Virus record (IMG/VR): IMGVR_UViG_3300029993_000005
Span: 1 to 64,000 of that record
DNA length: 64,000 nt
Direction: 5' to 3' (one strand)
This document shows, piece after piece, positions 3,157 through 41,445 of the stretch (the stretch's first letter is position 1; each line of letters opens with the position of its first letter). The position numbers were made by a program, and so were the translations under genes. The notes under the pieces were generated by a model. The model was given only the letters and a program-made list of their open reading frames with translations, made no database searches and was not told where the DNA came from.

Positions 3157-4275
3157 TTAATCACACGGAATCAAGTTAATCATCTTATGGATGATCCAGA
3201 AGTGATCCGAGTATAGCTCATGCGCTTGAAGTAGCCCGAGCGGTACCCACTTGACCTCTTCGAAATCATCGTTTGCCTCTACGAGAGGTAAAGAAGTATT
3301 GTCGTTCAGTAGATACAGATACGCATGCGTGATGATGCGTCCCCGGTCATCTGACCGATTCGGATCAGAGAACACGTGCTTGAACCTGAATGACAGGTCC
3401 AACATTGAACGCGGTAACTTAATGCGTGTTTCCTCGTGAGATTCACGCAATGAACTGTCAGCTAACACTTCGTCATCGTGTGCAAATCCACCTGGTAGCG
3501 CCCACAGTCCTTTACCAGGATTCAATTTGCGTTTACCCAGCAGTACGTGTGATGACTGAATGAACACTGAATCAGTAGTCGTCATTATAGGACGATAGGG
3601 TTTGTTGCCCGCATACTGGTGCTCAATTTTGTACTGAGCAGCAAAGTCACGCTGATCGCGCAAACCATCTATAAACTCAACGTTACGTGGAATCCAAGTA
3701 TCAAGATACTCCGCCACGGGTTCAGGTACGTGCTGCCGTGAATAGTTCCACGTACCGGCCAGAATGGAATCGCGTAGATCCGTTGCATTTAGAGTCACAC
3801 CTAAGCCGGGCATACCCAACTGTTGTACCTTGTAACCATGCACGTTGACTGAACCCCACTGCGGGAATTTCTTCAGATAGTACGAGGTATGGTCCTTAGA
3901 GAAACCAATCAGTCCTATAGTCCTAGGTATAGGCCAATCATCATCTGCAAGTTTGTTCTGAACGTAAGCAACCTTCTTATGGACATCCATACACCAGTGG
4001 AAATCGTGGTCATGCATGTGATCGTCTAAGAACTGAACGATGATGCGACTGTCTCTGATTTCCTGCTTGTACGTGCGCCATAGCATCTCTTCGACTTCAA
4101 CTGCCGTCCAGGGATTCTTTCGGGTACGAGGGCGGTTGGCTGAACCCGTCAAGACCAGTACATGACGCGCTTTCTTTAATGCTTCATCAATAACATGCTT
4201 GTGGCCATTATGTAAGGGGCGAAATCGACCAATGAACACAAGCATATCGAATTCATACTCATAGATGTTTGACAT
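3157..4275 (-). CDS. nadM: bifunctional NMN adenylyltransferase / Nudix (ADP-ribose) hydrolase
   Basis: GRFRPLHNGH nucleotidyltransferase motif, NATDLR, Nudix box ALPGGFAHDDEVLADSSLRESHEET; start moved to ATG 4275 behind GGAG. Confidence 0.93.
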   Translation of the reverse strand: MSNIYEYEFDMLVFIGRFRPLHNGHKHVIDEALKKARHVLVLTGSANRPRTRKNPWTAVEVEEMLWRTYKQEIRDSRIIVQFLDDHMHDHDFHWCMDVHKKVAYVQNKLADDDWPIPRTIGLIGFSKDHTSYYLKKFPQWGSVNVHGYKVQQLGMPGLGVTLNATDLRDSILAGTWNYSRQHVPEPVAEYLDTWIPRNVEFIDGLRDQRDFAAQYKIEHQYAGNKPYRPIMTTTDSVFIQSSHVLLGKRKLNPGKGLWALPGGFAHDDEVLADSSLRESHEETRIKLPRSMLDLSFRFKHVFSDPNRSDDRGRIITHAYLYLLNDNTSLPLVEANDDFEEVKWVPLGLLQAHELYSDHFWIIHKMINLIPCD

Positions 4276-4276
4276 T

Positions 4277-4325
4277 TGCAAATCTCCTTTGCAGTTAATA
4301 AAAGAACACTCTCTGTGTTCAGTTT
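4277..4325 (-). promoter_or_regulatory. Twin-hairpin 5' leader of nadM
   Basis: GAACAC-AGAGA-GTGTTC at 4304-4320; TGCAAA-GGAGA-TTTGCA at 4277-4293. Confidence 0.6.
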
Positions 4326-26318: not shown

Positions 26319-27269
26319 TTATCTTATGTGTTGTTGCAACCTTGTGAATAGTTTTTGAACCTGATTATCCGTGTACCCGAAGTAAGTTTGAGCCTTCTTC
26401 TGGTACCTGCTGAATGCTACATTATCAACTAATACCGAATTGTCGGATCCCAAGAATTCAGAAAATCCTTCATGGAAGTGTCCGGCACAACACAACAAAA
26501 ATTCTTGCGCGTCCTCACGAACCCTGTGCGATATATTTACTAGGGCCTCCAGATGCTCCTTAGCATGCGCTAAATAGGTGCTAGGGGCCTCCAAAGACAG
26601 TACTTCATCCACCTGTACATGATAGCTCTCGGTCATACCCTCGTGGTTGACGTACAAGCGTTGTCGTCCGGGACTCGTGTGATAAGTAATTAAGGTCTGT
26701 CCTGTGTTGTGAATCGCTGATTTTGCCGTGTTCTCAAAGTGCAGCAACGATTCAAAACGTGGGTACGACATATACAACGCCTTTATTGCTGCTGTCTCCA
26801 TGTCGGCTTGCAGATCATCCCTGCGTACACCATAACTCTTGATCAGAAAAGTCATCTTCTTGCTGATAAACTTTCCGATGTACGAGGACAAGGACTGACC
26901 AGTAATCGTGTCCGAGACTAAGGTATCGAAGTCCTCCACCGAGTATGCAGGATAAGTCAAAGGCAAGTGTTTCAGATTCAACCTAGATAGAAACTTAGCA
27001 TCTTTTAAAGTGACTCCAAAGTCAGAGGCCTTTGGCTTAGGTGAACCGAACCTAGATTTGTAGAAGGCCCAAGCATACAGCTTGCAGTTCTTTAACACCT
27101 CTCCGTCTGTTCGCACCATAGAGAGTACACGTTCGGCCTTCTCAGGGTCACCTACTAGTTTGACTAGTGTTCGTTGATCAATATCCGGTCTGTGAAACAG
27201 ATAAGCAAATAAAGCACCGCCAACATATGCCATCTCATGACTGGATAGCCCCAATTTATTTTGCAACAT
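26319..27269 (-). CDS. putative divergent sigma70-family factor
   Basis: RRDDLQADMETAAIKALYMSYPRFESLLHFENTAKSAIHN resembles region 2; C-terminal AQTYFGYTDNQVQKLFTRLQQHIR resembles region 4 HTH; ATG 27269 behind GGGGGA. Confidence 0.55.
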   Translation of the reverse strand: MLQNKLGLSSHEMAYVGGALFAYLFHRPDIDQRTLVKLVGDPEKAERVLSMVRTDGEVLKNCKLYAWAFYKSRFGSPKPKASDFGVTLKDAKFLSRLNLKHLPLTYPAYSVEDFDTLVSDTITGQSLSSYIGKFISKKMTFLIKSYGVRRDDLQADMETAAIKALYMSYPRFESLLHFENTAKSAIHNTGQTLITYHTSPGRQRLYVNHEGMTESYHVQVDEVLSLEAPSTYLAHAKEHLEALVNISHRVREDAQEFLLCCAGHFHEGFSEFLGSDNSVLVDNVAFSRYQKKAQTYFGYTDNQVQKLFTRLQQHIR

Positions 27270-27310
27270 GTTAAGTCCCCCGACGAGTCTTGAATACGTA
27301 TAAGTACAAT

Positions 27311-28021
27311 TCAACGTGTGATATTGAAACTCAATTGATCCACAACATCGGCAACGCGACTTCGCCGGGACCTGGACTTAGAGCTAGTCTTGGACTTATC
27401 TTTAGTATCAAACATTTGGGGAAACGTATCGATAGTCGGCGGTTCATACGCATCGATAATAGAGTTTCGTACAATCACTTTATTATTGGGATCATGAATC
27501 TTGTTGGCTAGTTGCAGTTCAGTGCGCTTGACTCGCCACTGCTGGGCCGTCATAAGTCCTTCTGAATTTTGATTGATATAAGAAACAAAGGATGAGCCAC
27601 GTGTGCGCTTGTCAGGACTACCCATGAGTATAAGTTGACCACCCGAGGTATAACCCATGACGAAAGCAGCCAGATAGTTTGAAACGAAGTCGCGACCCAC
27701 CTTGAAATAGAGTTTGGTTCCCATCTCGAATTGACGCTTGCGCTGGTCCCTGAGCAAGCCTAGAAATATCTTACGTTCTTTGGTAGTGAAATTTTGAAAC
27801 AGAGAAGCAATCTGTACAAACTGATCGCTATTTTTAGCTACTTGAGTGACGTCAGGGGTGAAACAACGAGGGGCAATACCCACGCCCTTCACTCCCTCCT
27901 CGATACATACTTTGTCTCTACTTGAGTGTGCATGATGTTTGTAATGCAGACACTCGTTGCAGCGAAATGCTTCACTTAAGGACTTTGCGCTTGCAGTACC
28001 CAGCGAGTCTTTTTTCAACAT
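27311..28021 (-). CDS. hypothetical with N-terminal Cys/His metal-binding motif
   Basis: CNECLHY...VC...PRCF. Confidence 0.75.
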   Translation of the reverse strand: MLKKDSLGTASAKSLSEAFRCNECLHYKHHAHSSRDKVCIEEGVKGVGIAPRCFTPDVTQVAKNSDQFVQIASLFQNFTTKERKIFLGLLRDQRKRQFEMGTKLYFKVGRDFVSNYLAAFVMGYTSGGQLILMGSPDKRTRGSSFVSYINQNSEGLMTAQQWRVKRTELQLANKIHDPNNKVIVRNSIIDAYEPPTIDTFPQMFDTKDKSKTSSKSRSRRSRVADVVDQLSFNITR

Positions 28022-28170: not shown

Positions 28171-28545
28171 CTACACAATAATACTGGATTTATTTTGCTG
28201 GGTCTGGGGCAGGGACTGGGCCACCTGAATACTGGTCGTTGCCTTGATGTAGTCATTGACCAAGGCTTGTGGCGCGGGCAGCATGACTAATACAAGGTCA
28301 TCGGGTAGAACCAATGATTCTAAGGTCGGTAGAAACCCACCTAGACTTAGCCAAGGGCTTAATGTAAGTGCAGGTGCCCCCGTTTGAGGGTTACGTGTGG
28401 GCACCACTTCTAAGGCTCTGTGAACCCGCAGTCCAGGACTTTCTTCGTCGCTTAGTTCTGATTCGAATGTGGCCTTGGTCAGCAGAACAACACCGGTCTT
28501 GAGATGGATAAGAACCACATCGCCGTCATTCATTTGCGCACTCAT
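28171..28545 (-). CDS. hypothetical, possible Sm-like beta-barrel as seen in large myoviruses
   Basis: LIHLKTG..LL...LSPW...Y.K.TTSI pattern (from memory). Confidence 0.4.
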   Translation of the reverse strand: MSAQMNDGDVVLIHLKTGVVLLTKATFESELSDEESPGLRVHRALEVVPTRNPQTGAPALTLSPWLSLGGFLPTLESLVLPDDLVLVMLPAPQALVNDYIKATTSIQVAQSLPQTQQNKSSIIV

Positions 28546-28575
28546 TTTGCGTACTCCGTTGTTGTCTTTGTGGAT

Positions 28576-29022
28576 TTAGTCTGAGAAGTGTCTACGGTAC
28601 AAATTGTCTAAGGCTAGATTAATCAAGGCCTCTCTACTGCGCAAGCTTGGATACACTTTCTTTAGTACTTCTAACTGATGCTGCTTTTTTCGATCAAGCG
28701 TTAGTATAACAACGACTCGTTTGTTTGGATCATTTTTTACAGCTTCGAACGCATTAAAAACACGTGTTGCCAACCACAATATTTTCTGTTTAGCCTCGTC
28801 CGGCTCACCTAGCAAAAGTTGAAAATAGGGTTTTTTAGACTTGATGCTCAGCGCGATTTTGTGTAGGCAAGTATGGTGTCCATCGCACAGAGACACCGTG
28901 GGCCCGTCAGAGCCGCCAGCTGCACGGGGGACTATATGATGTTCCTCTCTGTTGGCCGAGCCACCGCAGCCTACGAACTTAGAACGACACACCCAACAGT
29001 GGTCAAGAACTATTGAGTCCAT
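28576..29022 (-). CDS. HNH endonuclease with C-terminal RHH-like segment
   Basis: CWVC...EEHHIVPRAAGG...LCDGHHTCLH; VILTLDRKKQHQLEVLK...SREALINLAL. Confidence 0.85.
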   Translation of the reverse strand: MDSIVLDHCWVCRSKFVGCGGSANREEHHIVPRAAGGSDGPTVSLCDGHHTCLHKIALSIKSKKPYFQLLLGEPDEAKQKILWLATRVFNAFEAVKNDPNKRVVVILTLDRKKQHQLEVLKKVYPSLRSREALINLALDNLYRRHFSD

Positions 29023-29045
29023 GATTAACTCCAGTTGGTTACAAG

Positions 29046-29450
29046 TTAAGACATGGTTGCTAACCAGTCAGCAGCCTGGTCACTATCGTCAGAGTCACAG
29101 CCAAGACCAATACCTAGAGCAGCTGCAATCTCATTGGCTAGTTCGTCACCAACAGCACTTCTGGGTGCTTCTAGGACAGAAACCTCAGCATTTGGATGTG
29201 CAGCTTTGAATAAATAGCCGAGAGGGTCGCGGACTAGTCCGCAAATAAATTTGGTTTCTGTTCTCTCCAGAGCTATACAAGGACCAGTAATACAGCCCAG
29301 GAATTCTTGAGCCAACATACAAGGTTCGACAGAACAGCAATAACCGCAACCATTACAGGATTCACCCATTTTTGGTTTTGCTAGACTTAAGCTGATTTGA
29401 GTCACGATTAATTTTAACTTTGAATTTATTTGGGATTGGGTTGGGGGCAA
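29046..29450 (-). CDS. CxxCxxCC (YkgJ-like) Cys-rich metal-binding protein
   Basis: CNGCGYCCSVEPC...GPC.AL...CGL; start uncertain. Confidence 0.7.
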   Translation of the reverse strand: MPPTQSQINSKLKLIVTQISLSLAKPKMGESCNGCGYCCSVEPCMLAQEFLGCITGPCIALERTETKFICGLVRDPLGYLFKAAHPNAEVSVLEAPRSAVGDELANEIAAALGIGLGCDSDDSDQAADWLATMS

Positions 29451-29510
29451 GAACTGCCAGATAGCCTTTTCGATAGCTTAGATGAATTTGGTATGTGTGA
29501 AACTATAGTG

Positions 29511-29519
29511 TATTTACTA
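29511..29519 (-). promoter_or_regulatory. TAGTAAATA motif
   Basis: Intergenic, upstream of 29450. Confidence 0.55.
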
Positions 29520-29533
29520 GCTAGCTTTAAGTT

Positions 29534-30049
29534 TTAGCGTTGAGTCTCAGCCATCATTGATGCATAAAAATCTGCTTGAGGCACCGAATGAAAGTCAGAT
29601 GCTGAAATAAGCTCAGCGTCAAAAGTAAGGGGTTGATAAGAACCCTGCAGGCTGTTCGAAATACTGATAATAAAGCTGCGGTAAGACCGGCTCAACGAGG
29701 GCATATCTGTTTTGATCACTAAATGCGGAAAATAGTGATCACCGTAGAAAGCAGATGGTGCGTGCTCGCGGACTTCAAGACAACGGTCAGTTAGCGATCT
29801 ACTGGTCAACGGAAGTAACAAGGACGATGTCATAGTCGAGGTGTCAAAATATACTTTGGCCGTGCCAGCCTGAGCCTCATAGAATGCCTCTTGATCAACT
29901 TCCATTTCATGCGCCGAAGAATTGATTTCAACAAAGGTTTGGTTCAAGTTCAAGTCAAATGGACAGCCGCTAAAAACATTCGACAAATAGCTCAATGTTT
30001 CTTTGGATGGTAAAACCAATAATTGATAGACTAACATTTGATGCCTCAA
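29534..30049 (-). CDS. Acb1/T4-57B-like 2H-phosphodiesterase fold with degenerate HxT motifs
   Basis: S.ETL..L, LLL.L.S..L..R, DHYFPHLVI and PLTFDAEL line up with the recalled Acb1 layout; first HxT replaced by FVE. Confidence 0.55.
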   Translation of the reverse strand: MRHQMLVYQLLVLPSKETLSYLSNVFSGCPFDLNLNQTFVEINSSAHEMEVDQEAFYEAQAGTAKVYFDTSTMTSSLLLPLTSRSLTDRCLEVREHAPSAFYGDHYFPHLVIKTDMPSLSRSYRSFIISISNSLQGSYQPLTFDAELISASDFHSVPQADFYASMMAETQR

Positions 30050-30627
30050 GTTTTGATCTGCAAAGGAATTTGGCTGATAGCTGCGAACGTCCTCAAATGT
30101 CCCGCTTCAGTGCCCCATAAATCCTTACGATGTTGAACCGCATCTTCTATAGAACGAAGCTCTATCAGTTTGTTTGGTGATGTCCTTCGGTTTAAGAAAT
30201 AAACCCGCAAATTGCTTTCCAGTGCACGATTAATAGCGTAGGTCCAAAATCTTTGGCCTTGTGAGGTCTGCTGCTTGTCTGCAATAAGTGCCTTGTACTT
30301 TGGCAGCAAATAGTCAAAGAAGATGTGGGCCGCAAACCCAGCAGAAGCGGGATCGGTTTTGTTGGACCACACCAAAACCTGACGCCCCAGCTCAAGCCTG
30401 TTGTGCTTCACGGCTTCATATCTAACGAAGTACAAGATTTCGTTATCACGTGCAAGAATAGAGTAGCCGTTCTGTTTGTCGCCGAGAAAATAAACGTCGG
30501 CTCCATGATATTTTGTTGTTGGCTTCGCCTTCTTCTCTCTTATTCTGGAGACAAGCAATTTCTTAACATACTCCACTAGGGAGTCGTCAAGTGGTTCTAT
30601 TAACTGAGTTGCAAGATGCTCTTCCAT
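30046..30627 (-). CDS. hypothetical, possible GNAT-fold protein
   Basis: RQVLVW...GFA..IF..YLLPKY..LIAD.QQTSQGQRFW resembles phage GNAT-like proteins (inference). Confidence 0.45.
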   Translation of the reverse strand: MEEHLATQLIEPLDDSLVEYVKKLLVSRIREKKAKPTTKYHGADVYFLGDKQNGYSILARDNEILYFVRYEAVKHNRLELGRQVLVWSNKTDPASAGFAAHIFFDYLLPKYKALIADKQQTSQGQRFWTYAINRALESNLRVYFLNRRTSPNKLIELRSIEDAVQHRKDLWGTEAGHLRTFAAISQIPLQIKT

Positions 30628-30646
30628 GATTTTTCCTAATCAAACA

Positions 30647-31642
30647 TTAAAAGGCTGGCCCCCAGGATTTCAACAGTATATGTGATCCTGGGAAGGCCTT
30701 GGCAAACAGCGTGACCTCAGAACTAGGCATGACCCAGAACCAGGCTCCACCAGCCATACCACAGGGCTTTTCTTCCACAAATGATAGCTTAGTTTTGAGC
30801 TGGAGTTCAATTAATTTTTTCACCGCGAACGCCACTTGTAGCCATTTGTCCCTAGGCACTTCCTGCCCGTCAGCATGGCGTTTGCTGAGCTTCACAGACT
30901 TGGGGTTGATGCCTATCACAAGCTGGCCGTGAACCACAGGGTAGCCACCAATCGAGTCAACGTTAAACCCATTGGCCTTGAGTGTTTCATAGTGCATGGA
31001 CTTTAGAGCAATCGGTATAACAGGAATTCTGGAGATTACAAAGTCTTTATCCTTCAGCGATTCTAGGTTCTTGCTGTCTTTAGAAAGACGTTCAATAATT
31101 GATGCGGCATCAACAGAAAACAGGGGATCGGCGTCTTCACCCAATAATAATCGTTGGTGCTTTGCTAAACTGGCTTTAGCCTTAACCAATTGTTTGTCGA
31201 TTTCTACTAAGGCCTTCGGCAACTCAGTCACTTCAAGCATAGACTCTTCTATGTCACCTATGAACACACCTTCTCTGAGTGTTGTGAGTTCATTCATATA
31301 TGATTTCAGGACCTTGCCTAGTCCGTGGGGGACCGGAGCCTTGAATAGGAGCTCAAGCTTACGCCTAGCAATCGTTAACTTCTTGAGCTTTAATTCTTTA
31401 GCTACAACTGGTAATGCCGCCAGACTGGCTGCGGATTTTCGCAGTTCAAATCTCAAGTCGGTTAGTGCTGAAACTCTACGTTCTAATTTGGTCCCTATCT
31501 GTGCGTCATCGGGTCCGGCCTTGGACCCGACTTGGAGTAAAGGTATGAGTTTCGTCAACTGCGATTGGTTCTTTGCTGATAAGCCTTGTCGTGCTTGATA
31601 ACGATCAAAATTTGAGTCAACAACCCGTGTCGCGTTTTTCAT
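30647..31642 (-). CDS. hypothetical protein
   Basis: 331-aa ORF. Confidence 0.8.
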   Translation of the reverse strand: MKNATRVVDSNFDRYQARQGLSAKNQSQLTKLIPLLQVGSKAGPDDAQIGTKLERRVSALTDLRFELRKSAASLAALPVVAKELKLKKLTIARRKLELLFKAPVPHGLGKVLKSYMNELTTLREGVFIGDIEESMLEVTELPKALVEIDKQLVKAKASLAKHQRLLLGEDADPLFSVDAASIIERLSKDSKNLESLKDKDFVISRIPVIPIALKSMHYETLKANGFNVDSIGGYPVVHGQLVIGINPKSVKLSKRHADGQEVPRDKWLQVAFAVKKLIELQLKTKLSFVEEKPCGMAGGAWFWVMPSSEVTLFAKAFPGSHILLKSWGPAF

Positions 31643-31682
31643 ACGTTTCTCTAGTGGCTTGTACTAAAATTGAATTCCAAAT

Positions 31683-31727
31683 AAAGAATGGGGCCGAACT
31701 CTTGACCTTGAGTAAGCCCCATTCTTT
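31683..31727 (-). terminator. intrinsic terminator after the 31766 gene
   Basis: aaagaatgggg / ccccattcttt stem, T-rich follow-on on the minus strand. Confidence 0.7.
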
Positions 31728-34333: not shown

Positions 34334-35557
34334 TCAGCCCTTAACGCAGAGTACTTGTTTCAGCGTAGCCTTGATTTCTACCAATTCCGATTGTGCCTCC
34401 ATAACATCATCAATATTTTTATAAGCACCTGGAATTTCGTCCAACACGCTACTATCTTTTTTGCATTCAACACCGGCTGTTTGTGTAGCAATATCGGCTA
34501 ACGAAAAACTACGTTTTGCTTGCCCGCGAGACATGACGCGACCGGCCCCATGACTGCAAGAACAATAAGCTGCTTCATGTCCCTTACCACAGACAATGAA
34601 AGAACGGGCACCCATGGATCCAGGAATGATACCCAGTTGACCTTTGTACGCACCTACAGCACCTTTGCGGGTGATCCATAGAGGGCGTCCACCAAATTCC
34701 TCTTTAGACAGAAAGTTATGATGGCAGTTTACGGCTTCGTTCACCAAAGTGAAAGGTTTAATTGTGCGCTCAACAGCGGACAAAACAAGCATCAGCATGA
34801 GGTCACGATTCAGCTTCGCGTATTCTTGGCTCCACAGCATGGCTTCAACGTACTCATCAAATAGCTCGGTGCCCTCAGCGAACCAGGAAAGATCCTTGTC
34901 TGGCAAATTGACGTGCTGCCTGTACAGCTCTTCTTTTGCCAAGTTGGTCGCGGCCTCACCCACGGTCTTGCCAACATTACGACTACCCGAATGCAACATC
35001 ACCCACACATTTTGGTTTTCATCCACGCACAACTCGATGAAATGATTGCCACCACCCAAAGTACCTAACTGCATGTTCATACGAGCTTCGTCAAAACGTT
35101 TGATACGTTTCATGATACGAATTGAGGGAAATCTAGATAACAGTTCCGCACGACGACGGCTGAGTTCCATGCCGACTAAACCTTGATGACGCAGGTGAAT
35201 ATCCCGTTGATGGTAGCTAAAACCTACAGGTACATCGCGTTCGATTTGATGACGGACACCAACCAAACTATCAGGAAGGTCAGAGGCCTTAAGTGACGTC
35301 TGTACAGCACACATGCCGCATCCGATGTCGACTCCAACAGCTGCGGGTATAACTGCCCCAGTCAGAGGTATAACGGAACCAACAGTTGCACCCATACCAA
35401 AGTGTACATCAGGCATCACCGCAACGTGTCCACCAAGAATAGGCAGGTTTGACACGTTGCGTAATTGATCAAGGGCCGTCTGTTCCACGGGCATATTGCC
35501 CGTCCACAGTTTGATTTTACCGCCAAACATTTGCTCATAAACTTCGTTCTGTTGCAT
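34334..35557 (-). CDS. rtcB: RtcB 3'-phosphate/5'-OH RNA ligase
   Basis: MPDVH.G.G, VGVDIGCGM, GTLGGGNHFIE, HSGSR, HHN, RKGA, PGSMG, SHGAGR, DEIPGAYK. Confidence 0.97.
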   Translation of the reverse strand: MQQNEVYEQMFGGKIKLWTGNMPVEQTALDQLRNVSNLPILGGHVAVMPDVHFGMGATVGSVIPLTGAVIPAAVGVDIGCGMCAVQTSLKASDLPDSLVGVRHQIERDVPVGFSYHQRDIHLRHQGLVGMELSRRRAELLSRFPSIRIMKRIKRFDEARMNMQLGTLGGGNHFIELCVDENQNVWVMLHSGSRNVGKTVGEAATNLAKEELYRQHVNLPDKDLSWFAEGTELFDEYVEAMLWSQEYAKLNRDLMLMLVLSAVERTIKPFTLVNEAVNCHHNFLSKEEFGGRPLWITRKGAVGAYKGQLGIIPGSMGARSFIVCGKGHEAAYCSCSHGAGRVMSRGQAKRSFSLADIATQTAGVECKKDSSVLDEIPGAYKNIDDVMEAQSELVEIKATLKQVLCVKG

Positions 35558-36839: not shown

Positions 36840-38408
36840 TTAAATAACTTTGAGCTTACGTGTATCCTTGTTGGCCTGGAACGAACGATCTTTTAGAATC
36901 GCTGCCTTTACCTCAGCCAAGTCCAGCAGGACCTTGGATCGGGGTCGTTTAAGCCATTCATCCAGTTGCTTCAAAACTAATCGCTGTTCTTTCAGCTTGA
37001 GCTTAAGTACCTCTTGATCCAGTTTTGAAAGTTGCCTGACCCTGAGTTCAAGAATCTGCTTTGCCTGATCCCCATCGATTTCTAGATTCTTGGTGAGGAA
37101 CATATCAGGGTCCTTTGCTCGCAGGGCCTTGACTATGATATCAAGTTTATCACAGGCATAAATCAAGAGTTCCGAATAAGCAATAGCTGCTCGTTGCTTA
37201 GTCTGCCTGTAGGCCAAACTCTTGCGTTCCAACTCGATACGCATTACCAGCCACTGCTTAAGCAACTCAGGTACAGACAGTGCAAGAAACTCAGTCTTGA
37301 ACGTGGTGACGCCATCCAGGATCTGGGCCTTACGTTTCGTCACATTGAGTTTGAAACTCACGCTCTTGCGGGTAGCCAGCCTAATCTTTTCCACATATTT
37401 CTCAAACTGCGTCAGATTGTACGCCGGTTTGCATTCAATGGTAAGCGTGGCTGAACCCTTCGAATTGAAGCATCGTAGAGTCTCAGGCATAGCCCGAACC
37501 TTCTCTACAAATTTCTGTAGGTTGGTGCCCGGAGGCCAGTCATTGATTATCAGTTTCTTGCGGTCTAGTTCTACTTGAAGTTCGGACTCGAACTTAACTT
37601 GGGTCTCGCTGCCGGTGAAAAGCCCCATCCACCCTTTTTTGTTCTCCGGAGTCTTGAGTAATTGACCACCCCATTTGTGCGCAAACTTCAGGGTTCGTGC
37701 ATAATCCGTTGGGGCCAGCACTTCACCTTTGAGCATGCGTTCTAGAATCAGAATTACGGAGTCCGGGGTAAAAGTAGGAATCAATGTCGTGATGCCAACG
37801 CCAATTCCTTCGCCACCATTAAGAATTACATTAGGCAATTGAGCGGGTAGTGTTACAGGCTCCACTTCTTTGTTATCGTAGTTAGGTACAAAGCTAGTGA
37901 CGGATGCATGTAGGTAATTGGGATCAAAGAATGTTTGCCCGTATGCTGATAATTGCATGTTCGTGTAGCGCATGGCCGCCGCACCATCAACCATGTTACC
38001 CCAGTTACCTTTTCCGTAGAACACAGAAGTTGGGTGGTTGACCATGGTGGTTATAGCATCGCTAATTGACTTGTCGCCATGTGGATGATATCGACCTAGT
38101 ACAACGCCTACAATACGAGCTGTCTTTTCAAACGATGAAAAAGCTTCCTTTGCCGTCCCATACATATTGCGGCGCTGTACAGGTTTAAGCCCGTCATACA
38201 TATCAGGTACAGAGCGGTCTAGATTAACAGAGATTGCATAGGTAGTCATACGACTACGACCAAAATCTCTTAACGTGGAAGATTTAATGTCATTGTCTTT
38301 TGTGGGCACCAAATCTGCAGAACTTACGGTTTTACGTGATTTCGTCGTAATTCGACGTTTGGCTATCATCTTATTCCTTGTTGATTTGGGCTGGGGCTTG
38401 AACTTCAA
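36840..38408 (-). CDS. gyrA: type IIA topoisomerase subunit A (GyrA/ParC-like, lacks the pinwheel CTD)
   Basis: DGLKPVQRR, YHPHGD, GNWG, AAAMRYT catalytic Tyr; only 522 aa. Confidence 0.92.
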   Translation of the reverse strand: MKFKPQPKSTRNKMIAKRRITTKSRKTVSSADLVPTKDNDIKSSTLRDFGRSRMTTYAISVNLDRSVPDMYDGLKPVQRRNMYGTAKEAFSSFEKTARIVGVVLGRYHPHGDKSISDAITTMVNHPTSVFYGKGNWGNMVDGAAAMRYTNMQLSAYGQTFFDPNYLHASVTSFVPNYDNKEVEPVTLPAQLPNVILNGGEGIGVGITTLIPTFTPDSVILILERMLKGEVLAPTDYARTLKFAHKWGGQLLKTPENKKGWMGLFTGSETQVKFESELQVELDRKKLIINDWPPGTNLQKFVEKVRAMPETLRCFNSKGSATLTIECKPAYNLTQFEKYVEKIRLATRKSVSFKLNVTKRKAQILDGVTTFKTEFLALSVPELLKQWLVMRIELERKSLAYRQTKQRAAIAYSELLIYACDKLDIIVKALRAKDPDMFLTKNLEIDGDQAKQILELRVRQLSKLDQEVLKLKLKEQRLVLKQLDEWLKRPRSKVLLDLAEVKAAILKDRSFQANKDTRKLKVI

Positions 38409-38421
38409 TCAGTCAGCAGAC

Positions 38422-41400
38422 TTAGCCCTCGCTATCACAGTTTCCACCCGTAGCATTTGCGGGCAAGCCTAACATGTCCCTGCGATAAGCTACGTCTTCA
38501 TTCATGAGTCTGACAAAATCAACGTGGTCCTCGGACTCAAGAGCCTTGATTTTTATCAGGGATCTAGTAGCTGGATCCATAGCCATGATACGCATCAAGT
38601 CTACATCAATCTCACCGTACCCTTTAACGTGATTTATTAGCGTTGATGATGGGGCTTTAATTTTCTTGAGCTTAACCTGAACTTGACTTAAGGTCTCACC
38701 GCACACTAATTGGTCCTTATGAATAGCATAAAACTCAGGGCTGTTAGCCACGTAGATCAAACCTCGGGTGAACAGGTCCGGCAGATACTTATAAAACAGA
38801 GATAGGAGCAAAGAGTTGATGTGACAATTGCTGGACACGACTCCTGACGGCAGGACGAACGAATGATAGCGTGGGACTGTCAAACAATAGACGGGCACCG
38901 GCTCTTTCAGTTCTTGAACTCTAAGCTTGGATACCGCTTGGTAACCCAATCCACTTTCTTTGTCTGTTAAAGCCTGGTCTTTCAGATGATTGTTTGAGGG
39001 ACACCACACACGATCACCGACCTTCATATCCTTGGACTTAACGTACACAAGTTTTTCATGCTCTGGATGTGGTTCAGTATCACGACCATACATTGCTCGG
39101 GTTACTACACACACCCATTTATGATTTTCATCAACTCTGAATTTCGAACGTCCGATTTCAAAAGCCATTAGTCGGTCTACGTTTTTGACCAATTGCGCGG
39201 TTGCTGGTGCCCAGATTTCTTTTCCGTGGTGCCATACAGGCACCTCAAACACTAGTTGTTCTGCAGTGTTTCCCCGTTCCTGAGTTAAAGAACTATTAGC
39301 GAGGCCTCTAATAGTTGCCGTATGCTCAGTCCAAACAAAGTCCTCTGATTTTGACTGGCTGCGGGCCATACTCCTGACCCGAATTTGAGTGTCGCCAATA
39401 AATGGGCCATCTGGATCCGGGTCAGCCAAACAGATGATTTTGCCAACCGTGAGTTTTGCACAAGGGTCTACGGCCTTTGCGTCATATCCAATAGCTGCCA
39501 GAATATTAACAATTTCTTCACTTTCCAGTGTTGTACCTTTTTTATCCTTTTTTAGTGCATTTTTGACTTTGCCTTTTAATGGCAGTACAGCCTGGTAGGG
39601 GAACCTGGCCTCTTTGGCCGAGCCGCCTGCCGATTCCCCTTCTACGATAAAGAGTTCACGATCCGCAACTTTGGTACGCATATCAAATGAAGCATATTTG
39701 GCGGGCAGTCCATTGCGCTTCACAGCATTCAACGTGGCTGCTGCCTTTTTCGACATCGTGAATTTGGTCTTCAACTCATTGAGCTTAGTCGCTCTTTCAC
39801 ATAAGCGTGAAGCCAATGCTTTATTAGCCTTGAAGAATTCTATGGTGGCTACCGTTAATTTCTTTTGAAATTCAGGACCCATGCGCTCATCGCTAAGTTT
39901 TACCTTATCCTGGGAATTGAACTTGGCTTTATGCAATTTTGCGTTGACTAGGCCAACCAAGCCTTCTTTGAAATCCGATTCACGGAAAGGCAGAATTACT
40001 TTTCCTTTGACCGTTCGGGTCTTGATATGGGGCTTTAAACCCGCGTATAGGGCGCTGACAACGCTATCAACGTGCTTGCCACCCTGGCTATTGGGTAGCC
40101 CGTTGGTGAACCCCCTGAGATCACATCCATCGTAATTGGAGAACGACACAACTACGTCTGCTGCATTCGGATCACCGGGTTCTGATTTATACTCGAAATA
40201 TTTTGATTCGGCACCAACTTTAAACTTGTCTAAGCGTGCTTGAACATACTCAGCGACACCTGTCTTTGACAAGAACTGACGCTTGCCCCTGGGGGTGGAA
40301 ATAATGATGGCGAAACCTGGATTGAAATAAGCCATGATTTCAGCCCATTCAAGTGCTAGTGCCCCAGGGAACTTGTTGGTCGAGAAAATTGAAGCATCGG
40401 GCTTGAAATGAATAACCGTACCCTTCTTGACCAGTGTGCCGTCCGGACCTTTCGGAGCCTTACATTTTGCAACGGGGGATGTTAGCTTACCTTTCTTGAA
40501 ACCTACCGAGTACCATTGGTTCTCGTAGAAAGTATGAACATCAAAGAATTCGGCGGTAGCATTAGTTCCTTTAGCGCCAATACCATGAGTATTTGATACC
40601 AGCACTCCGGGTTCAATAAAATAAGTATGTTGGTTGTCAACAGTCATGCCGTAAACAGGCACGGGTTCTGTTGTGTGGAAAGTTTCCACACTAATGACCG
40701 TGAGCTCACTGTGCGTATACGGCGTGATCAGCATTTGTCCAGGTTCCAACTGTTGGGCCTGAACTTTCAACGTCCAGTAATCAGTGCGAACGTAGTACGG
40801 ATGGTCGGGAGTATTCTCAATAACCGAACCATCGCTTAGGGTTACGCGCACCAATTCATCAACGTATTTGGTTAGTTGTACATGTGATATGAAAGACTGT
40901 GCCTGGACATCATTATCAACGTCCCAAGCAACGATAGGAATTGGTTCTTTATTCGTGGTCCAACGTTCGTATAGTTCTTTGAAGGCTACGGTGTTTCCTT
41001 TAGCTATTCTGACTTGTGTTGAACCAACAAAGCAACCAATCGACACCTCGTAGGCTTCGCTATCATACTTACCTGACGTGTGCAAGGCACCAAAAGCCGC
41101 CTGCATCGTGTCCATTTTGTTGACGACATCCTTGCCATTCACATGAATGTGAGTTTTGGTCACGCCTTGAGGGATGCCGTGGCCCCTATCCAGTACCCAA
41201 AAACTACCGTCGCTATCTACGTGCAACAATACTGCATCGTTACGACCGGCCAGCCCTTCGTCCAACCCGTTGTCCATAAGCTCACGTACAACTAACCACA
41301 ATCCCGACGAATCAGTACCCCCAATGTATTGACTTGCGTTTTTGCGAATAGTGTCAGGCCAAACAAGAGTTTCAATATTTTTACTGGTGTAGGCTGCTAC

Positions 41401-41445
41401 TTTCTTTAACGCTGGATTTGCTTTTGTATTTGGTGTAAGGGCCAT
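38422..41445 (-). CDS. gyrB: type IIA topoisomerase subunit B (GyrB/ParE-like) with two inteins; 666 aa after splicing
   Basis: ELMDNGLDE, D.GHGIP, SIG|THGIG, VEGESAGG, PLKGK, DPDPDG|CHI, KGYGE. Confidence 0.95.
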   Translation of the reverse strand: MALTPNTKANPALKKVAAYTSKNIETLVWPDTIRKNASQYIGGTDSSGLWLVVRELMDNGLDEGLAGRNDAVLLHVDSDGSFWVLDRGHGIPQGVTKTHIHVNGKDVVNKMDTMQAAFGALHTSGKYDSEAYEVSIGCFVGSTQVRIAKGNTVAFKELYERWTTNKEPIPIVAWDVDNDVQAQSFISHVQLTKYVDELVRVTLSDGSVIENTPDHPYYVRTDYWTLKVQAQQLEPGQMLITPYTHSELTVISVETFHTTEPVPVYGMTVDNQHTYFIEPGVLVSNTHGIGAKGTNATAEFFDVHTFYENQWYSVGFKKGKLTSPVAKCKAPKGPDGTLVKKGTVIHFKPDASIFSTNKFPGALALEWAEIMAYFNPGFAIIISTPRGKRQFLSKTGVAEYVQARLDKFKVGAESKYFEYKSEPGDPNAADVVVSFSNYDGCDLRGFTNGLPNSQGGKHVDSVVSALYAGLKPHIKTRTVKGKVILPFRESDFKEGLVGLVNAKLHKAKFNSQDKVKLSDERMGPEFQKKLTVATIEFFKANKALASRLCERATKLNELKTKFTMSKKAAATLNAVKRNGLPAKYASFDMRTKVADRELFIVEGESAGGSAKEARFPYQAVLPLKGKVKNALKKDKKGTTLESEEIVNILAAIGYDAKAVDPCAKLTVGKIICLADPDPDGPFIGDTQIRVRSMARSQSKSEDFVWTEHTATIRGLANSSLTQERGNTAEQLVFEVPVWHHGKEIWAPATAQLVKNVDRLMAFEIGRSKFRVDENHKWVCVVTRAMYGRDTEPHPEHEKLVYVKSKDMKVGDRVWCPSNNHLKDQALTDKESGLGYQAVSKLRVQELKEPVPVYCLTVPRYHSFVLPSGVVSSNCHINSLLLSLFYKYLPDLFTRGLIYVANSPEFYAIHKDQLVCGETLSQVQVKLKKIKAPSSTLINHVKGYGEIDVDLMRIMAMDPATRSLIKIKALESEDHVDFVRLMNEDVAYRRDMLGLPANATGGNCDSEG
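38827..39405 (-). mobile_element. mini-intein 2 (193 aa), Pro-start, class-3-like, in the TOPRIM DxDG motif
   Basis: PFIGDT...NHKW (B12 Trp)...VYCLTV (F4 Cys)...GVVSSN|C; removal restores DPDG-CHINSLLL. Confidence 0.9.
40591..41034 (-). mobile_element. mini-intein 1 (148 aa), class 1, in the GHKL ATP lid
   Basis: CFVGST...TPDHPY...VYGMTV...GVLVSN|T; removal restores SIG-THGIG. Confidence 0.92.

What the first reader, a model, noticed from the sequence alone, without database searches (positions are those of the whole stretch)
29534..30049. Acb1/57B-like protein with broken catalytic motifs: possible cyclic-nucleotide sponge or pseudo-enzyme
Seen: the pattern order matches my recollection of T4 Acb1: S.ETL..L, then the first HxT site (here TFVEINSS), then LLL.L.S..L..R, then Y.PH (DHYFPHLVI, His kept, Thr to Val), then P..FD.E. 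Established: Acb1 is a 2H phosphoesterase that degrades CBASS cyclic nucleotides using two HxT motifs. Inference: loss of one His and both Thr suggests a non-catalytic binder or an altered substrate. This would be an undescribed anti-defence variant.
Basis: inference. Interest (0 to 1): 0.65.

Follow-up and report, generated by a model that had tools for sequence, protein, structure and literature searches.

The report
Dead Acb1-like protein in jumbo phage
A 230-kb phage from peat carries a well-conserved relative of the anti-CBASS nuclease Acb1 that keeps the enzyme's fold but has lost its catalytic residues, so it probably binds rather than cuts something; what it binds is untested.

Summary
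The minus-strand ORF 29534-30049 (true start most likely the ATG at 30037, 167 aa) encodes a protein whose AlphaFold model is a 2H phosphoesterase. Its best structural matches are the two solved phage Acb1-type enzymes (Z 16.0 and 13.4). Homology to Acb1 is supported through intermediate sequences (hhalign 99.9% and then 98.9%).

They read F35-V36-E37 and H105-L106-V107. H105 varies among close relatives (H/F/Y/N), and no histidine is conserved in the close clade.

This is not decay:
- The family has at least 115 clusters at 50% identity, mostly degenerate.
- dN/dS is about 0.08 in the one informative pair.
- Intact and degenerate forms occupy the same locus in related phages.
- Three complete jumbo phage genomes carry both a degenerate copy and an intact Acb1-type enzyme elsewhere.

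Aromatic residues persist at positions aligned with two of Acb1's four base-stacking residues, and more tentatively a third in a C-terminal lid-like motif.

I conclude it is a catalytically dead Acb1 derivative kept for a non-hydrolytic role. A ligand-binding (sponge-like) role is the leading idea, but it is unproven. A 2025 survey of viral 2H enzymes kept only hits with intact catalytic histidines. This is a new variant of a known kind.

The parts
29534..30037 (-). CDS of the degenerate Acb1-like protein (167 aa, stop TAA at 29534-29536)
   Evidence: ORF list. Homologues all start at this Met. AF2 model has pLDDT 86.7. 2H fold with Acb1-type top hits.
30038..30049 (-). Upstream extension of the maximal ORF (TTG start at 30049), probably not translated; it contains the GAGG ribosome-binding site at 30044-30047
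   Evidence: Sequence read. The upstream gene's TGA stop is at 30046-30048. No homologue has the four extra residues.
29927..29935 (-). Former HxT site 1, now F35-V36-E37 (aligned with Acb1 H44-x-T46)
   Evidence: MAFFT and hhalign alignments. In the 17-sequence close clade this site reads Y/F/H/G at the His position and mostly E at the Thr position.
29717..29725 (-). Former HxT site 2, now H105-L106-V107 (aligned with Acb1 H113-x-T115)
   Evidence: In the close clade position 105 is H in 10, F in 4, Y in 2 and N in 1 sequence; position 107 is V, I or L in 16 of 17.
29849..29851 (-). Y63, aligned with the Acb1 base-stacking residue W74
   Evidence: W, Y or F in 63 of 86 degenerate members and in all 17 of the close clade.
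29744..29749 (-). F97-Y98, aligned with Acb1 D106-F107 (F107 is a base-stacking residue)
   Evidence: both positions are invariant in the close clade.
29612..29614 (-). E142 of the FDAE motif, aligned with Acb1 E138 and conserved across intact and degenerate clades
   Evidence: E in 77 of 86 degenerate members, in 12 of 13 T4-type members and in 13 of 16 other intact members.
29564..29581 (-). C-terminal motif P153-Q-A-D-F-Y158, with D156-F157 aligned to the D146-W147 lid residues of T4 Acb1
   Evidence: This alignment is sequence-based only, and the region has lower model confidence (pLDDT about 70-77).
30647..31642 (-). Conserved 331-aa neighbour of unknown function (C-terminal WGFAF-type motif); in most related phages it lies immediately upstream of the Acb1-like gene
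   Evidence: The model shows an N-terminal helical bundle plus a C-terminal alpha/beta domain and has no clear PDB match.
28576..29022 (-). Conserved HNH-like 148-aa gene; it is the immediate downstream neighbour in the RSL1, BCSR5 and several metagenomic loci
27311..28021 (-). Gene of a PHROG family annotated 'DNA topoisomerase' (phrog_17701); it marks the end of the conserved block
   Evidence: E 3.6e-47. Genes annotated 'DNA topoisomerase' sit at the same relative position in RSL1 and BcepSaruman.

Best explanation
The gene encodes a catalytically dead descendant of the Acb1 family, the phage 2H phosphodiesterases that destroy CBASS cyclic-oligonucleotide signals. SHOWN: it has the 2H fold and is closest to the solved Acb1-type enzymes. 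It is linked to them by intermediate sequences. It occupies the same locus that holds an intact HxT/HxT Acb1-type gene in related phages. The tetrad is replaced by F-x-E and H-x-V, and no histidine is conserved in its clade. The clade is large and under purifying selection. Some genomes carry it alongside an intact Acb1-type enzyme. INFERRED: it no longer hydrolyses phosphodiesters by the 2H mechanism and has been kept for a non-hydrolytic job. Aromatic residues remain at positions aligned with Acb1's stacking residues W74 and F107, and tentatively W147. A conserved Glu (E142) and a C-terminal D-aromatic lid-like motif also remain. The most likely mechanism is therefore binding of a small nucleotide-type ligand in the old substrate cleft. 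That would mean sequestering or sensing a signal rather than destroying it. The ligand probably differs from Acb1's, or sits differently, because an acidic residue (E37) now occupies the phosphate-contacting Thr position.
For: - Fold: Foldseek top hits are 9q2y/9q2g (BCSR5 2H PDE-9) and 7t26/7t27 (FBB1 Acb1), with E 1e-7 to 6e-6. VIA-align gives Z 16.0 (rmsd 2.3 over 145 residues) and Z 13.4 (2.3 over 133), against about 10 for other 2H families. BFVD hits are annotated Acb1.
- Homology chain: window clade to intact relatives, hhalign 99.9%, E 1e-32. Intact relatives to T4-type Acb1, 98.9%, E 1e-17. Intact relatives to PDB 9q2g, E 1e-18, and to 7t26, E 9e-11. The direct comparison is weak: hhalign 64.8%, BLASTP E 0.011. 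PF23474 matches 39 of 108 family representatives, and close degenerate relatives score just under the cut-off.
- Site mapping and residue frequencies.
- Tree: intact forms are basal, and the window protein sits in a 59-row subclade with no intact tetrad.
- Same locus for intact (P0196) and degenerate members.
- Selection: dN/dS is 0.076 for P0005 vs P0007, with dS about 1, near saturation. BcepSaruman vs BcepSauron differ by 6 synonymous and 1 nonsynonymous change.
- Coexistence with an intact paralogue in BCSR5, BcepSaruman and a 219-kb IMG/VR genome.
- Published definition of the Acb1 catalytic and binding residues: PMC9117128.
Against: - No binding or activity data exist.
- Catalytically dead T4 Acb1 (H44A/H113A) served as the inactive control in Hobbs et al.. 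Simply losing catalysis therefore does not make an effective sponge.
- E37 at the Thr position that normally contacts phosphate should disfavour a phosphodiester in the ancestral pose.
- The counterparts of Y12 (now Q/E) and of E141, the adenine-specific contact, are not retained.
- The retained aromatic residues could be structural.
- The gene is syntenically fixed in a topoisomerase/replication block across a wide group of jumbo phages. That is atypical for accessory anti-defence genes.
- There is no evidence of oligomerisation, which the known sponges show.
- Residue mapping of the lid rests on sequence alignment only. I could not inspect model coordinates.
Confidence: 0.45

Rival explanations
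1. It is a pseudoenzyme with a protein-binding or structural role in the phage's own nucleic-acid metabolism. It would be a fixed component of the topoisomerase/replication gene block, not an anti-defence factor.
For: The gene sits at the same position across RSL1-like phages, Sarumanvirus, BCSR5 and many metagenomic relatives. That position is after a conserved protein of about 300-340 aa, before or near a conserved HNH-like gene, and between topoisomerase II genes. In some loci the three genes overlap by 1-4 nt. The acidic and hydrophobic replacement of the phosphate site fits loss of nucleotide binding.
Against: Lineage-specific genes have been inserted on both sides of it in the window (193 aa and 134 aa), so tight coupling is not required. 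The same locus holds an intact Acb1-type enzyme in some relatives. Aromatic residues aligned with Acb1's stacking residues, and the lid-like motif, are retained. The co-folding test with both conserved neighbours gave no verdict and so neither supports nor refutes this.
Confidence: 0.25
2. It is still an enzyme, using a different catalytic arrangement or acting on a different substrate than cyclic oligonucleotides.
For: E37, E142, R85, D65, N39, Y98, Y102 and Y158 are conserved polar or aromatic residues in or near the old cleft. Some tested viral 2H enzymes cleave none of the known signals, which suggests unknown substrates exist.
Against: All four tetrad positions vary among close relatives. 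Position 35 is Y/F/H/G, position 105 is H/F/Y/N, and E37 is S, V or A in several. No conserved His or other obvious general acid/base pair exists in the clade. 2H chemistry requires the two histidines.
Confidence: 0.15
3. It binds RNA ends carrying 2',3'-cyclic phosphate, or related RNA repair intermediates, and works with the phage's RNA ligases.
For: The 2H superfamily ancestrally handles 2',3'-cyclic phosphates. An RtcB ligase lies 4.3 kb upstream on the same strand in the window. A T4-type RNA ligase lies 2.5 kb downstream in BcepSaruman.
Against: The RNA-ligase neighbours are not conserved across loci. The family is much closer to Acb1 than to LigT, CPDase or Usb1. The phosphate-binding residues are the ones that were lost.
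Confidence: 0.08
4. It is a decaying remnant of acb1 with no function.
For: The catalytic residues are lost. Panoptes-type guard systems are known to select for acb1 inactivation.
Against: Every member examined has an intact frame. There are at least 115 clusters at 50% identity and 25 invariant columns among 12 sequences at 35-56% identity. dN/dS is 0.076. The predicted fold is confident.
Confidence: 0.02

Closest known systems
Acb1 (T4 gene 57B product; Erwinia phage FBB1 Acb1, PDB 7T26/7T27; Pfam PF23474)
   Same: It has the same 2H fold (Z 13.4, rmsd 2.3 over 133 residues). Motif order is shared. The S-x-x-L-x-x-R helix, the Y-x-P strand, a conserved Glu aligned with E138, aromatic residues at the W74 and F107 positions, and a C-terminal D-aromatic motif are all shared. 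It is phage-encoded and of similar size.
   Different: The HxT/HxT tetrad is gone (F-x-E and H-x-V). The counterparts of Y12 and E141 are not retained. It has no N-terminal extension and has a six-residue insertion before the lid. It falls below the Pfam threshold. Enzymatic activity is not expected.
2H PDE-9 of Burkholderia phage BCSR5 (PDB 9Q2G/9Q2Y; bioRxiv 10.1101/2025.08.21.671373, Cell Host Microbe 2025)
   Same: It is the best structural match (Z 16.0, rmsd 2.3 over 145 residues). BCSR5 also carries a member of the window protein's own degenerate clade (QRE00122) at the topoisomerase locus, so the two are paralogues within one genome.
   Different: PDE-9 has catalytic H50 and H123 and an N-terminal lid. 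It cleaves 3'3'-cGAMP while sparing the Panoptes decoy 2'3'-c-di-AMP. The window protein lacks the tetrad and the N-terminal lid.
Phage nucleotide sponges (Acb2, Acb4, Tad1, Tad2)
   Same: The proposed mode of action is the same: binding an immune signal without cleaving it. All are small phage proteins.
   Different: There is no sequence or fold relationship. The known sponges are homo-oligomers with high-affinity pockets, and oligomerisation was not tested here. No known sponge derives from a nuclease fold.
Non-catalytic 2H-fold domains (AKAP18 central domain, which binds AMP; trypanosome mitoribosomal ms64)
   Same: These are 2H folds for which no phosphoesterase role is apparent from the PDB entries: an AMP-bound AKAP18 central domain and a mitoribosomal small-subunit protein. 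They appear among the structural hits (Z about 8).
   Different: They are eukaryotic, distant, and not in the Acb1 lineage. From my own recollection, AKAP18 keeps its HxT motifs.

Membership tests
Acb1 family (anti-CBASS 2H phosphodiesterase, PF23474) | 2H phosphoesterase fold with a U-shaped cleft | tested here: met
   The AF2 model has pLDDT 86.7. Foldseek and VIA-align top hits are Acb1-type structures with Z 13.4-16.0.
Acb1 family (anti-CBASS 2H phosphodiesterase, PF23474) | Sequence-profile membership (Pfam gathering score of 27 bits) | tested here: not met
   The window protein has no PF23474 hit at E <= 1. Close degenerate relatives score 12-26 bits. 39 of 108 family representatives match at E <= 0.01. 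Homology is supported only through intermediates.
Acb1 family (anti-CBASS 2H phosphodiesterase, PF23474) | HxT/HxT catalytic tetrad (H44, T46, H113, T115) | tested here: not met
   The sites read F35-V36-E37 and H105-L106-V107. H105 is not conserved in the clade.
Acb1 family (anti-CBASS 2H phosphodiesterase, PF23474) | Aromatic base-stacking residues Y12, W74, F107 and W147, and the adenine contact E141 | tested here: inconclusive
   W74 aligns with Y63, F107 with Y98 and W147 with F157, all retained as aromatics. Y12 aligns with Q5 and E141 with the non-conserved S145. The mapping is alignment-based and was not checked in 3D.
Acb1 family (anti-CBASS 2H phosphodiesterase, PF23474) | Flexible C-terminal lid | tested here: inconclusive
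   A C-terminal extension carries the conserved P-x-x-D-aromatic-Y motif and a predicted helix at 155-166 with lower confidence.
Acb1 family (anti-CBASS 2H phosphodiesterase, PF23474) | Cleavage of 3'3'-cGAMP, cUA, cAAA or cAAG, and rescue of phage from CBASS | not testable with these tools
   This needs biochemistry and phage genetics.
Phage nucleotide-signal sponges (functional class) | High-affinity, non-hydrolytic binding of an immune nucleotide signal | not testable with these tools
   It is inferred only from the retained pocket-like residues and the lost catalysis.
Phage nucleotide-signal sponges (functional class) | Homo-oligomeric assembly that forms the binding pockets | not tested
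Self-association was not examined.

The most novel reading that the evidence does not exclude
A nuclease-to-sponge (or nuclease-to-sensor) transition. A large, old clade of Acb1 descendants in jumbo phages has given up hydrolysis. It now neutralises a host nucleotide signal by sequestration, acting alongside an intact Acb1-type enzyme where one is present. The signal might be a different molecule from Acb1's substrates. The arrangement might also avoid triggering guard systems such as Panoptes, which sense signal degradation.
Probability: 0.25. Interest if true: 0.8.

Novelty: new variant of a known kind. Interest (0 to 1): 0.6.

Why it matters
Acb1-type 2H enzymes are a main route by which phages, and some animal viruses, defeat cyclic-nucleotide immunity. 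All studied members are enzymes, and the one systematic survey kept only hits with intact catalytic histidines. This finding defines a sizeable, selected, catalytically degenerate branch of that lineage. It sits at a fixed locus in RSL1/Saruman-type jumbo phages and coexists with an intact paralogue in some of them. If it binds a signal, it would be the first sponge derived from a signal-degrading nuclease, and its ligand might point to an unrecognised signal. If it does something else, it is a clear case of an anti-defence enzyme fold recruited to a new role. Either way it comes with natural controls: intact genes at the same locus in related phages, and intact paralogues within the same genome. 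Those controls make the question directly testable.

Tried and rejected
- Direct family scans of the window protein found nothing useful. Pfam and PHROGs gave no hit. NCBIfam gave only a spurious rad24 hit far below its cut-off. A single-sequence PDB search gave only chance hits.
- Megablast of 6 kb around the gene against GenBank phages found no match.
- The ESM Atlas holds the sequence, but its own model is poor (pLDDT 0.32), so its structural neighbours (SRPBCC, DUF2505) were disregarded.
- Complex prediction with the two conserved neighbours (331-aa protein and HNH-like protein) and the Acb1-like protein as partner scored 0.00. The verdict was 'no answer', so it is not evidence either way.
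- The conserved 331-aa neighbour was folded to find a functional clue. Its N-terminal helical bundle matches only generic bundles, and the C-terminal domain has no clear PDB match.
- I attempted population-level selection analysis from public reads. The phage occurs in many peat metagenomes but is essentially clonal there, with no substitutions listed, and there are no RNA runs. This gave no pN/pS and no expression evidence.
- The promoter and terminator scan found no more sites than shuffled controls.
- The idea that the 331-aa gene at 26319-27314 is the counterpart of BcepSaruman's RNA ligase was rejected: there is no similarity.
- The literature search found no description of catalytically degenerate Acb1 relatives or of an Acb1-derived sponge.
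- Residue-level 3D inspection of the pocket was not possible, because model coordinates are not exposed to scripts.

Full report
**What is there.**
The window belongs to a 230,110-bp IMG/VR virus record estimated 97% complete. GC content is 46%. The phage is found in many peat metagenomes.

The finding's coordinates hold a minus-strand ORF, 29534-30049. All homologues begin at the internal Met. That ATG at 30037 is preceded by GAGG at a 6-nt spacing, and the upstream gene's stop codon is at 30046-30048. The real CDS is therefore most likely 29534-30037, giving 167 aa.

**Fold.**
Direct scans gave nothing: no Pfam or PHROG hit and only chance hits in a single-sequence PDB search. Eight metagenomic homologues gave an alignment that folded well, with mean pLDDT 86.7 and pTM 0.81.

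- Foldseek against the PDB ranks two groups first. These are the Burkholderia phage BCSR5 phosphodiesterase (9q2y/9q2g, E 1e-7 to 8e-7) and Erwinia phage FBB1 Acb1 (7t26/7t27, E 4e-6 to 6e-6). Usb1, plant CPDase, LigT and the penguinpox cGAMP PDE follow.
- VIA-align gives Z 16.0 (rmsd 2.3 over 145 residues) and Z 13.4 (2.3 over 133) for the two Acb1-type proteins. Other 2H families score about 10.
- BFVD returns the RSL1 and Achromobacter phage Motura orthologues, followed by proteins annotated Acb1.

**Homology to Acb1.**
The direct signal is weak but consistent.
- The family profile's top PDB hit is Acb1, at E 1.1, aligned over the second HxT strand.
- BLASTP against T4 57B gives E 0.011.
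- hhalign against a T4-type Acb1 alignment gives 64.8% probability.

An exhaustive profile search found 115 cluster representatives. The more distant of these carry intact HxT/HxT motifs. These intermediates close the chain.
- Window clade to intact relatives: 99.9%, E 1e-32.
- Intact relatives to T4-type Acb1: 98.9%, E 1e-17.
- Intact relatives to PDB 9q2g: E 1e-18; to 7t26: E 9e-11.
- PF23474 (Acb1) matches 39 of 108 representatives.
- Degenerate close relatives of the window protein score 12-26 bits against a 27-bit cut-off.

**The catalytic sites.**
Three independent alignments place Acb1 H44-x-T46 on F35-V36-E37 and H113-x-T115 on H105-L106-V107.

The 17-sequence close clade varies at all four tetrad positions:

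| Window position | Residues in the close clade |
|---|---|
| 35 (aligned with His 44) | Y9, F4, H3, G1 |
| 37 (aligned with Thr 46) | E11, S3, V2, A1 |
| 105 (aligned with His 113) | H10, F4, Y2, N1 |
| 107 (aligned with Thr 115) | V, I or L in 16 of 17 |

No histidine column is conserved in the clade. Hobbs et al. define the tetrad as the acid-base catalyst and use H44A/H113A as the dead control (PMC9117128). Canonical 2H chemistry is therefore very unlikely here.

**What is kept.**
Aromatic residues persist at the positions aligned with two stacking residues. W74 aligns with Y63, which is W, Y or F in 63 of 86 degenerate members. F107 aligns with Y98, which is invariant in the close clade.

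The R of the L-x-x-R helix, the Y-x-P strand and a Glu (E142, aligned with Acb1 E138) are conserved across intact and degenerate clades. A C-terminal P-x-x-D-aromatic-Y motif aligns its D-aromatic pair with D146-W147 of the T4 lid.

Two counterparts are not kept: Y12 (now Q or E) and E141, the adenine contact (now the non-conserved S145). A Glu at the Thr46 position is a clade-wide gain, present in 38 of 86 degenerate members. These mappings rest on alignment only, because I could not inspect coordinates.

**Not decay.**
- A tree rooted on T4-type Acb1 puts intact forms basally. The window protein falls in a 59-row subclade with no intact tetrad, and 86 of 132 rows are degenerate.
- dN/dS between two degenerate members that are 87% identical is 0.076, with dS about 1, near saturation.
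- BcepSaruman and BcepSauron differ by six synonymous changes and one nonsynonymous change.

**Locus.**
The gene sits in the same block in RSL1, BcepSaruman, BCSR5 and every metagenomic contig examined. It follows a conserved protein of about 300-340 aa. It precedes, or lies near, a conserved HNH-like gene of about 150 aa. The block lies between topoisomerase II genes.

One contig (cluster P0129/P0196) has an intact gene with a PF23474 hit at exactly this position. The degenerate forms are therefore positional counterparts, and probably orthologues, of an active enzyme. In the window, two lineage-specific genes flank the gene. One is a 193-aa gene shared with one relative at 57% identity. The other is a 134-aa Cys-rich ORF.

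**Paralogues.**
The window's genome and RSL1 carry only the degenerate copy. BCSR5, BcepSaruman and a complete 219-kb IMG/VR genome carry the degenerate copy plus an intact Acb1-type gene far away.

The BCSR5 intact copy is the solved protein, 2H PDE-9. It cleaves 3'3'-cGAMP, spares the Panoptes decoy and has an N-terminal lid. Retaining both copies argues that the degenerate protein does something the enzyme does not.

**Prior knowledge.**
The 2025 survey of viral 2H enzymes kept 75 of 84 structural hits, those 'with intact catalytic histidines'. My literature searches found no description of degenerate Acb1 relatives or of a sponge derived from Acb1. All database names for family members read 'hypothetical protein'.

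**Interpretation.**
I am about 90% confident in the following points:
- The protein is an Acb1-lineage 2H-fold protein.
- It lacks the catalytic tetrad.
- It is maintained by selection.
- It is fixed in a conserved block of a jumbo-phage group.

My leading mechanism is non-hydrolytic binding of a nucleotide-type ligand in the former cleft (0.45). I prefer it over three rivals:
- A protein-binding or structural role in the replication block (0.25).
- A new catalytic chemistry or substrate (0.15).
- An RNA-end binding role linked to nearby RNA ligases (0.08).

The points that speak against the sponge reading are given in the Against line in the best explanation. The co-folding test with the two conserved neighbours returned no verdict. 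Public reads gave neither expression data nor polymorphism.

Noticed in passing
window 34334-35557 (-): There is a full-length RtcB tRNA-splicing/RNA repair ligase (PF01139, E 6e-119) 4.3 kb upstream of the Acb1-like gene on the same strand. It is absent from this block in the related loci examined. BcepSaruman instead has a T4-type RNA ligase 2.5 kb downstream of its copy.
   Followed up: partly
window 38422-41445 (-): A 1007-aa GyrB/topoisomerase II large-subunit-like gene is interrupted by intein/HINT-domain sequence (Intein_splicing and PT-HINT hits). A topoIV/GyrA-like gene follows at 36840-38408.
   Followed up: no
window 30647-31642 (-): A conserved 331-aa protein lies directly upstream of the Acb1-like gene in nearly all related phages. 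Its N-terminal helical bundle and C-terminal alpha/beta domain end in a WGFAF-type motif. It has no Pfam match and no clear PDB match. One JGI homologue is labelled endonuclease V, which nothing here supports.
   Followed up: partly
window 28576-29022 (-): An HNH-like 148-aa gene (CxxC ... HH ... H motifs plus a conserved DPNK C-terminal half) is conserved at this locus across the phage group. It is annotated as a 'homing endonuclease' in BCSR5, but its fixed position suggests a core gene rather than a mobile one.
   Followed up: partly
window 29046-29450 (-): A lineage-specific 134-aa Cys-rich ORF is inserted between the Acb1-like and HNH-like genes. It has no family hit.
   Followed up: no
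window 30046-30627 (-): A 193-aa gene (phrog_1349, unknown function) is inserted between the 331-aa gene and the Acb1-like gene. The same insertion occurs in the phage carrying P0006 (57% identity) but not in RSL1, BcepSaruman or BCSR5.
   Followed up: partly
L009:1510-2007 (-), L010:1375-1941 (+), L021:1429-1941 (+): These are intact Acb1-type paralogues (HxT plus HxT or HxS) with an N-terminal extension, in BCSR5 (the solved 2H PDE-9), BcepSaruman and a 219-kb IMG/VR phage. They lie far from the degenerate copy. The window's genome and RSL1 lack such a copy.
   Followed up: yes
window 28500-31700: The phage is present in at least 16 peat metagenome runs that hold half or more of the sampled words. 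The four runs laid on the stretch showed no substitutions, so the population looks clonal. One low-depth contig in run X15 shows two 1-nt deletions at 29563 and 29565 near its end, probably an assembly error. An identical copy of the gene lies on a second IMG/VR contig (L016, 96,856 bp).
   Followed up: partly
L013:2577-2885 and 4074-4280: The contig carrying the intact gene at this locus also encodes a cREC_REC-domain protein, a thymidylate synthase and an Hfq-like protein within the same block.
   Followed up: no
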